DNA from: Sminthopsis crassicaudata
Taxonomy: Eukaryota
Direction of reading: 5' to 3'
DNA length: 64,000 nucleotides
Assembly: GCF_048593235.1 (NCBI RefSeq)
Contig: NC_133618.1
Span: forward strand, 608,362,889-608,426,888
The notes under the pieces are model-generated. The model did not search any database. It was given only the letters and a program-made list of their open reading frames with translations, and had not been told where the DNA came from. Both the position numbers and the translations under genes were made by a program. Below, piece after piece: positions 54,050-55,110 of this stretch (position 1 is its first letter; the number at the start of each line of letters is the position of its first letter).

Positions 54050-55110
54050 AGACAAAGGAGGAAATCCTCTCCTTGTCCATGCTATCAACATGAGTTTCTA
54101 TTATAAAAAGGTTGCAAGCCAGAACAGCAGCCCTCCCAATGCTATGTGAGACATGTTAACATTCAGAAATTCAGAGGTGCTTTAATGCATTATGAACCTT
54201 GGCGGTCACTCTGAAAGTGCGACTGACACGAGTGTTTCTCTGAGCCTACCTCGGCAGAAAATGCTATTTGATGAAAGCGTGGCTGCACTCTTTAGACAAG
54301 AGAAATTCTTGTGGCAGAAGATAAACAAAGAATGACTCATCTCTGTGCTGATGAAGGGATTTCATGATGAGAGCATGGCTGCAAAGCAGTCTCTAATGAT
54401 GCTGATGCCAGATTCATCAACCATGACTATTGAGATGTCTTCTTCCTGTGAATGTGCTGTAATTGCTGGAGAGGATATTGAAATAGCCCCTTGTTGTGGA
54501 GACAGCCTACGGTGGAACCAGGAAATTAAGTTGGGTGGAGGGGAAGAAAAATGTACTTTTCCCTCCCTAAATTACAGTCGCTCGAAGGAATAAAATATCT
54601 TATTTTTATATGCAATCAGTGGCTGTGATACAACAGCCTGCTTGTTCAAAAAAGCCTTGGAGAAACGCCAAGACCTAGGAGAGGTCATTGCTGTACTGAA
54701 TGATTTCGATTTGCCGTGTGATTCAGTTGCTTTGGCAGGAGAGCATTACCCCTTGGCCCCTAACCGTGCCTTGGGAAAGGAAACCTTTATTTACAGTCAT
54801 CAATGCAACAGCTTCATAAGACCTGTCACAAGAGAAACTACACTGAGTTGCCACTTACTGAAACTGTCCTGGCAGAATCCCTTTCAAGGGTCTCAATGAA
54901 TTCATCACTCATGAGACGTCCAAAAAGCCCTACAGATCGTGGCATTTTGTTTTGGAAGCCATCAATACCCACTCTCACTCCCATTCTGACATTCAATTTA
55001 CTTCACTGGAAAGGCTCTGTTCTCTCGCAGTTTATTAACAGGTAGGGGTGGGATGCAGCTGCAGAAAAAAGGGTTTGAGATTTTCCACAGTGGCAGACAA
55101 AGGCAAGGAC
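54050..55110 (+). mobile_element. fossil AcademX-like DNA transposon coding region (XPG/FEN1-like nuclease plus Cys-rich finger), pseudogenised
   Basis: Collinear motifs across frameshifts and stops: LFDES...QEKFL...NKE*LISVL; KQS-NDADA; IEMS...AVIAGEDIE; ILFLYAISGCDTTACLF; LEKRQDL...AGEHY; LPLT...SRV; PTDRG; LTPILT; GCSCRKKGLRFST (55051-55089). Confidence 0.75.

What the first reader, a model, noticed from the sequence alone, without database searches (positions are those of the whole stretch)
54050..55110. Fossil AcademX-type transposon (XPG nuclease plus Cys finger) in an apparently marsupial genome
Seen in sequence, collinear across stops and frameshifts: Y....SL*KCD*HE; LFDESVAALFRQEKFLWQKINKE*LISVL (54264-54350); KQS then shifted NDADA (~54385-54410); TIEMSSSCECAVIAGEDIEI; ILFLYAISGCDTTACLFKK (54597-54653); LEKRQDL...DSVALAGEHY; LPLTETVLAESLSRV; SPTDRG; LTPILT; GCSCRKKGLRFSTV (55051-55092). 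Established: DADxxI, GEDxD and HAxSGCDTT form a PIN/FEN1-XPG-like active site with an H3TH motif, and AcademX elements encode a transposase followed by an XPG-like nuclease and a Cys8 finger. Inference: this is the last ~350 codons of such a protein. I know Academ from invertebrates, fish, fungi and algae but not from mammals, so it could be an unrecognised mammalian DNA-transposon superfamily record, either ancient or horizontally acquired.
Basis: partly seen in the sequence, partly recalled or inferred. Interest (0 to 1): 0.88.

Follow-up and report, generated by a model that had tools for sequence, protein, structure and literature searches.

The report
Decayed Academ-type transposon nuclease fragment
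A dead, roughly 0.9-1.1 kb remnant of the nuclease end of a large 'transposase plus XPG-like nuclease' jumping gene sits here as single-copy DNA; it is real and rare for a mammal, but it is one more member of a known transposon type, not a new kind of element.

Summary
Window ~54231-55122 (+) is a collinear, broken coding remnant with 2 stops and about 4 frameshifts in 293 aligned codons. It may extend upstream to ~54042.

- **Match to a family.** Joined with X at each break, it scores 82.5 bits against a profile of an invertebrate protein family. One 101-aa piece alone finds that family among 1.8 billion proteins.
- **Fit to AcademX.** This is the architecture published for AcademX. I could not compare it with Repbase or Dfam Academ references.
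- **What the window holds.** Only the last ~330 profile positions are present, with no transposase part.
- **Not a host gene.** The fossil does not match host FEN1/EXO1/GEN1.
- **Copy number.** Depth is at or below single-copy level at 80% likeness. Two close relatives of the host also carry the sequence.
- **Age.** Decay suggests tens of millions of years, not Paleozoic age.

The novelty claim is weakened. An Academ fossil in human was published in 2022.

The parts
54042..54230 (+). Possible upstream continuation (start of the PIN domain: DKGGNPLLVH resembling DGGYLLH; HYEPWRSL*KCD*HE resembling DGY..SLSTKSAEQ). Contains two TGA stops (54212-54214, 54224-54226) and a frame change.
   Evidence: Seen by eye against the family consensus. 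It did not join the HMM alignment, so it is unconfirmed.
54231..54332 (+). Codons ..QKMLFDESVAALFRQEKFLWQKINKE, matching family HMM 1184-1210 (helical arch region after the first acidic motif). Followed by TGA at 54333-54335.
54336..54418 (+). LISVLMKGFHDES.., then a frame change near 54383 into KAVSNDADARFI. This is the second acidic cluster (DAD), equivalent to EAD of EXO1.
54420..54590 (+). After a frame change near 54419: ..CAVIAGEDIEI.. This is the third acidic cluster (family G.DTDL, EXO1 EDSDLL). Followed by TAA at 54591-54593.
54594..54836 (+). Best-preserved piece: NILFLYAISGCDTTACLFKK...ALAGEHY. It holds the H3TH motif (family HAxTGCDTTS, EXO1 LSGCDY) and the AGERF helix.
   Evidence: (E 9e-10)
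54836..55042 (+). After a frame change near 54836: LPLTETVLAESLSRV (family LPPTSAAARQHSLRVY), SPTDRG..W (family PTEWGW) and LTPILT.
55048..55122 (+). After a frame change: VGCSCRKKGLRFSTV, a remnant of the CXC-type Cys cluster (family C.GCRKxGLxC). It is cut short by a high-copy repeat that starts near 55123.
   Evidence: depth step
53383..53904 (.). High-copy interspersed repeats bounding the single-copy segment on the 5' side. No transposase remnant was detected upstream of them.
   Evidence: Depth in the thousands. The HMM search of the whole window found nothing else in order.
55123..55270 (.). High-copy SINE-like repeat bounding or truncating the fossil on the 3' side.
   Evidence: Depth jumps from <10 to >4000 at 55123; sequence. 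The 3' end at 55270 is judged from the sequence alone.

Best explanation
This is a dead, 5'-truncated fragment of the single long ORF of an AcademX-like cut-and-paste DNA transposon.

In intact relatives the ~1500-aa protein has four parts:
- an N-terminal region;
- an RNase-H-fold DDE transposase with an all-helical insertion domain, which would cut and rejoin the element ends;
- a FEN1/XPG-type PIN plus H3TH nuclease;
- a Cys-rich CXC tail, presumably zinc- and DNA-binding.

The published view of AcademX is that the extra nuclease is linked to its short 3-4 bp target-site duplications. I infer a flap or overhang-processing role for it from the EXO1/FEN1 fold.

The window keeps only the nuclease and the beginning of the Cys cluster, riddled with stops and frameshifts. 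It does nothing now. It is single or very low copy, and younger SINE-type repeats bound it on both sides.

Shown here: homology, domain identity, architecture in relatives, and low copy number. Inferred: the Academ label, the role of the nuclease, and the age.
For: - **Homology of the fossil to the family:** (82.5 bits, collinear over HMM 1184-1513).
- **One ORF in relatives:** overlapping ORFs P0089, P0106 and P0158 join the N-terminal part (P0083) to the nuclease/CXC part (P0067). Six-frame mapping shows complete but decayed copies of ~4.5 kb of coding sequence in L003, L004 and L006.
- **Nuclease identity:** the family profile matches human EXO1 at E 4.8e-5 over 210 positions, with the catalytic acidic motifs and H3TH aligned. 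Weak PIN-clan Pfam hints also appear: 5_3_exonuc_N, Pox_G5, NYN.
- **Element structure:** L003 has terminal inverted repeats of about 300 nt, making a 5.3-kb element. Curated bivalve Academ elements average 5565 bp (PMC10294476).
- **Published AcademX features:** a nuclease and 3-4 bp TSDs (PMC10045372).
- **Distribution:** the family occurs in molluscs and Capitella, where Academ ORFs were reported.
- **Not contamination:** independent runs of the host and of two close relatives hold the sequence.
Against: - No reference Academ transposase or AcademX protein from Repbase or Dfam could be compared. The superfamily name therefore rests on architecture.
- The key papers (Kojima 2020; Yuan and Wessler 2011) were not readable here.
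- Target-site duplications could not be resolved in the relatives examined.
- The window has no transposase part, no TIR and no TSD. The fragment alone cannot show that it arrived by transposition.
- Pfam recognises none of the pieces.
- The link of the transposase part to PF20231 (DUF6589) is weak, and that family is not annotated as Academ.
Confidence: 0.75

Rival explanations
1. The fragment comes from the same kind of 'transposase plus XPG-like nuclease plus CXC' element, but that element family is not Academ in the strict sense. It would be a separate or unnamed DDE superfamily, or a lineage that current libraries classify otherwise.
For: - No direct comparison with Academ references was possible.
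- The nearest solved folds are P element, IS256-like and hAT transposases.
- The only Pfam link is a weak one to DUF6589.
Against: - To my knowledge, and per PMC10045372, AcademX is the described eukaryotic lineage that couples a DDE transposase with such a nuclease.
- Element length and host range fit Academ.
Confidence: 0.13
2. It is the pseudogene of a host gene: either a FEN1/EXO1/GEN1/XPG/ASTE1 paralogue, or a nuclease gene domesticated from an AcademX element and lost fairly recently.
For: - Single or very low copy.
- Only the nuclease part is present.
- Decay is moderate rather than extreme.
Against: - The 101-aa piece matches only the transposon family among 1.84 billion representatives. 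It matches no solved FEN1-family protein even at E 10.
- The remnant is collinear without introns over ~0.9 kb.
- No intact vertebrate orthologue surfaced in any search.
Confidence: 0.08
3. Chance resemblance in non-coding DNA, or an assembly or contamination artefact.
For: None beyond the lack of Pfam hits for the pieces.
Against: - E 9e-10 for one piece within the window, and 82.5 bits for the collinear set.
- Independent runs of the same organism hold all sampled words. Two related organisms hold about 60% of them.
Confidence: 0.02

Closest known systems
AcademX lineage of the Academ superfamily of DNA transposons (Kapitonov and Jurka 2010; Kojima 2020, as cited in PMC10045372)
   Same: - Relatives of the fossil encode a DDE transposase and an XPG/FEN1-type nuclease in one long protein with a Cys-rich tail.
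- They are flanked by TIRs in a ~5.3-kb element.
- Their host range is invertebrate-rich.
   Different: - The window holds only the decayed nuclease end, in an (apparently marsupial) mammal.
- Sequence-level membership and the 3-4 bp TSD were not verified.
Academ transposase fossil in human chr4 near NDST4 (Frith 2022, PMC9004415, Table 3)
   Same: A lone, degraded, protein-level Academ remnant in a mammalian genome.
   Different: - The human fossil is 152 bp of the transposase part, of amniote age, and was found through turtle alignments.
- This one is ~0.9-1.1 kb of the nuclease part.
- It looks less decayed than a Paleozoic fossil should.
FEN1/XPG-family nucleases (human EXO1, PDB 3qea/5uzv)
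   Same: PIN-like fold with the same acidic clusters and an H3TH motif. The family profile matches at E 4.8e-5.
   Different: - Only distant similarity.
- The fossil itself matches no host FEN1-family protein.
- Its family carries a transposase and a CXC tail that host enzymes lack.
P element, hAT (Hermes) and IS256-like DDE transposases
   Different: About 9-10% sequence identity. This part is absent from the window.

Membership tests
AcademX (Academ superfamily) | XPG/FEN1-type nuclease domain encoded by the element | tested here: met
   The family profile A1 matches human EXO1 at E 4.8e-5 with catalytic motifs aligned. The fossil retains DAD, GEDIE and SGCDTT.
AcademX (Academ superfamily) | DDE (RNase-H-fold) transposase in the same protein, upstream of the nuclease | tested here: met
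   Met in intact relatives. One ORF spans both parts. The fold matches P element, Hermes, ISCth4, RAG1 and Transib transposases. In the window itself this part is missing.
AcademX (Academ superfamily) | Sequence similarity of the transposase to reference Academ transposases (Repbase; Yuan-Wessler Academ DDE alignment) | not testable with these tools
   No Repbase or Dfam access, and the defining papers are not held. The support is indirect only: Capitella and mollusc distribution and weak DUF6589 hits.
AcademX (Academ superfamily) | Terminal inverted repeats | tested here: met
   Relative L003 has arms at 5928-6234 and 10982-11275, 81-94% complementary. None can be assigned in the window, where both ends of the element are missing.
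AcademX (Academ superfamily) | 3-4 bp target-site duplications | tested here: inconclusive
   The termini of L003 lie in AT-rich, decayed sequence and no clean TSD is visible. L005 and L006 gave no usable termini.
AcademX (Academ superfamily) | Cys-rich (Cys8-type) finger after the nuclease | tested here: met
   The family consensus is SCNC..GC..CGCRKxGLxCS..C..C.G..C.N. Source databases name some members Tesmin/TSO1-like CXC proteins. Pfam TCR does not score them. The fossil keeps only GCSCRKKGLRF.
Host FEN1/EXO1/GEN1/XPG/ASTE1 genes (pseudogene) | Closer similarity to a host FEN1-family protein than to transposon proteins | tested here: not met
   The only hits among 1.84 billion representatives are transposon-family proteins. 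No solved FEN1-family chain matches at E up to 10.

The most novel reading that the evidence does not exclude
An Academ-type element was still coding in the marsupial lineage long after it split from placental mammals. The decay corresponds to roughly 0.1-0.35 substitutions per site, which suggests tens of millions of years.

That would imply one of two things:
- a horizontal transfer into marsupials, as is known for some hAT elements; or
- a domesticated nuclease gene that was lost only recently.

Either would be the first such record of the superfamily in marsupials.
Probability: 0.3. Interest if true: 0.6.

Novelty: new member of a known kind. Interest (0 to 1): 0.4.

Why it matters
Mammals are generally listed as lacking Academ. 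In the 2018 Repbase review of human TEs (PMC5753468) Academ is in the list of superfamilies, and I read it as not marked among those with human traces; text marking was not visible in the extract. The only curated-style record I found is one 152-bp amniote-age fossil in human (PMC9004415).

A ~1-kb nuclease-domain fossil in a marsupial adds a second, larger data point. If its moderate decay is confirmed, it would suggest that the superfamily survived or re-entered the mammalian lineage later than thought.

It has no present function, and it changes no concept of how such elements work.

Tried and rejected
- **Pfam on the six fossil pieces:** nothing. One reference was first mis-framed.
- **ESM Atlas look-ups:** only unnamed eukaryotic clusters.
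- **Locus of a beetle gene model (L001):** uninformative, a large intron-rich gene.
- **Transposase remnants elsewhere in the window:** searched with tblastn and a 1626-position family HMM. None found. The best off-site hit (58446-58580, E 0.22) is out of order and taken as chance.
- **TSD determination in relatives L003, L005 and L006:** inconclusive.
- **Read laying, second call:** gives depth but drops records. It therefore cannot show transcription or an exact copy number.
- **Taxon of the nearest hits (Logan contigs):** could not be learned.
- **Papers not held:** Kojima 2020 and Yuan and Wessler 2011. Supplements held no Academ sequences.
- **Host FEN1-family pseudogene:** rejected.
- **Chance:** rejected.

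Full report
**What is in the sequence**

They are not a chance pattern.

- tblastn of proteins later identified as relatives hits only this place in the 64-kb window. E-values go down to 8e-16, spanning 54186-54905.
- The longest open piece (54594-54896, 101 aa) was searched alone against 1.84 billion representative proteins. It found five single-stretch relatives at 40-46% identity (P0003, P0005-P0008). Three further repetitive multi-stretch hits I disregard.
- I built a profile HMM from 190 family fragments. Against every six-frame piece of the window it hits this piece at E 9e-10.
- In a local search it places three weaker pieces in the right order and spacing. These are 54255-54332 at HMM 1184-1210, 54380-54418 at 1229-1241, and 55051-55110 at 1498-1518.
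- Joined with X at every break, the remnant aligns as one domain of 82.5 bits over HMM 1184-1513.
- The breaks are TGA at 54333-54335, TAA at 54591-54593, and frame changes near 54383, 54419, 54836 and 55043-55047.
- The stretch 54042-54230 looks like the start of the same domain, with two more TGA stops. It did not join the alignment, so I list it as possible only.

**What the family is**

Database walking gave overlapping ORFs from arthropods, a sea spider, Capitella, molluscs and many unlabelled assemblies. Blast tiling shows that the N-terminal part (P0083-like) and the C-terminal part (P0067-like) lie in one ORF, for example in P0089, P0106 and P0158. A further ~490 residues precede them in P0162, P0186 and P0192. 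The full protein is therefore about 1500 aa (consensus). Decayed but nearly complete copies of ~4.5 kb of coding sequence are seen in loci L003, L004 and L006.

*Nuclease part.*
- A 20-sequence profile (A1) matches human Exonuclease 1 in the PDB at E 4.8e-5 over 210 positions.
- VVFDGY aligns to LVFDGC, DAD to EAD, G.DTDLL to EDSDLL, and HAxTGCDTTS to LSGCDYLS.
- The fossil keeps DAD (SNDADARFI), GEDIEI and ISGCDTT.

*Cys-rich tail.*
- Family consensus is SCNC..GC..CGCRKxGLxCS..C..C.G..C.N.
- Source databases name this CXC cluster Tesmin/TSO1-like in some members. Pfam's TCR model does not score it.
- The fossil keeps only GCSCRKKGLRF.

*Transposase part.*
- I aligned 23 sequences (A2) and folded the first (pLDDT 79, pTM 0.80).
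- Foldseek ranks Hermes and P element transposases first.
- All of these are RNase-H-fold DDE recombinases.
- Conserved FVFDNAD and VTFDQPLY motifs lie on strands of the predicted core.
- A few members carry weak or precomputed hits to Pfam DUF6589.

*Element structure.* Relative L003 is bounded by inverted repeats of about 300 nt (5928-6234 and 10982-11275), giving a 5.3-kb element.

**Why I call it AcademX-like, and what is missing**

PMC10045372, citing Kojima 2020, states that the Academ superfamily has two lineages. AcademH makes 9-10 bp TSDs and AcademX makes 3-4 bp TSDs, and the difference is linked to the helicase versus nuclease they encode. From my own knowledge of that work, AcademX families encode a single protein with a transposase and an XPG nuclease.

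- The family found here has exactly that architecture.
- Its element length fits the 5565-bp mean of curated bivalve Academ elements.
- It is common in Capitella and molluscs, where Academ ORFs were reported.

I could not compare it with any Repbase or Dfam Academ sequence. The defining papers were not held. TSDs could not be resolved in the decayed relatives. Membership is therefore well supported by architecture but not proven by sequence.

**What the window holds and lacks**

Only HMM positions ~1184-1518 of 1626 are present. No transposase remnant, TIR or TSD is detectable.

Contig depth from DNA runs shows that 53905-55122 is at or below single-copy level even at 80% likeness. The sequence on both sides is repeat DNA with depths of thousands to millions. 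The fossil is therefore a single or very-low-copy island cut off by younger interspersed repeats.

The same 31-mers are found in independent runs of the same organism. About 60% of them are found in two related organisms, which rules out contamination and shows that the locus predates those species.

**Host-gene alternative**

The piece that finds the transposon family finds no host FEN1/EXO1/GEN1 protein among 1.84 billion representatives. It also finds no solved structure at E up to 10. A domesticated AcademX-derived gene that died recently cannot be excluded, but nothing supports it.

**Age (inference)**

- At the 40 most conserved family positions in this region, intact members keep 88-97% of the consensus residues. 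The fossil keeps 21 of 37 alignable ones.
- Assuming neutral decay, with about three quarters of substitutions changing the residue, this corresponds to roughly 0.1-0.35 substitutions per site.
- Two stops and four frameshifts in 293 codons suggest the lower end of that range.
- With typical mammalian neutral rates (my assumption) this means tens of millions of years. That is far younger than the amniote-age Academ fossil reported in human.
- The estimate is rough, and it is biased towards the best-preserved parts.

**Novelty**

Frith 2022 (PMC9004415, Table 3) already lists an Academ transposase fossil in human as a type newly found there. An automated annotation reports ACADEM-1 in a horseshoe bat. 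I found no marsupial record in the held literature. I could not check Dfam or Repbase.

The finding is a real and somewhat unusual TE fossil. It is a new member of a known kind, not a new superfamily record for mammals. That the host is a marsupial is taken from the scan's notes and was not tested here.

Noticed in passing
window 54150-55100: Three runs guessed to be RNA libraries of the same organism hold 100% of the sampled 31-mers of the fossil. When their contigs were laid on the stretch, the depth over the fossil was 0, and the tool warns that a filter drops records. Whether the locus is transcribed (for example as intron or lncRNA) is open.
   Followed up: partly
window 52774-53208: Extremely high-copy repeat. 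Summed contig word depth reaches millions. There are poly-T/poly-A loose ends at 52966 and 53170 and many internal deletion joints. It looks like the 3' end of a very abundant retroposon on the minus strand.
   Followed up: no
window 9702-9996, 25954-26158, 35959-36244: Three runs of N (295, 205 and 286 bases).
   Followed up: no
L003 5928-11275 (ENA metagenome-assembly contig): Nearly complete but decayed 5.3-kb copy of the same transposon family, with unusually long (~300 nt) terminal inverted repeats. It could serve as a template for defining the family's ends.
   Followed up: partly
L006 8318-10276: A 961-nt perfect-looking inverted repeat (98% complementary, 37-nt spacer) is inserted in the middle of another copy of the transposon ORF. 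It is probably a foldback-type insertion.
   Followed up: no
P0042, P0028, P0070, P0078, P0114, P0118, P0161: Several annotated invertebrate 'host' proteins (alpha-catulin, glutamate receptor, Leu-tRNA ligase, Ig-like and others) contain segments of this transposon protein. They are most likely chimeric gene models that swallowed TE fragments.
   Followed up: no
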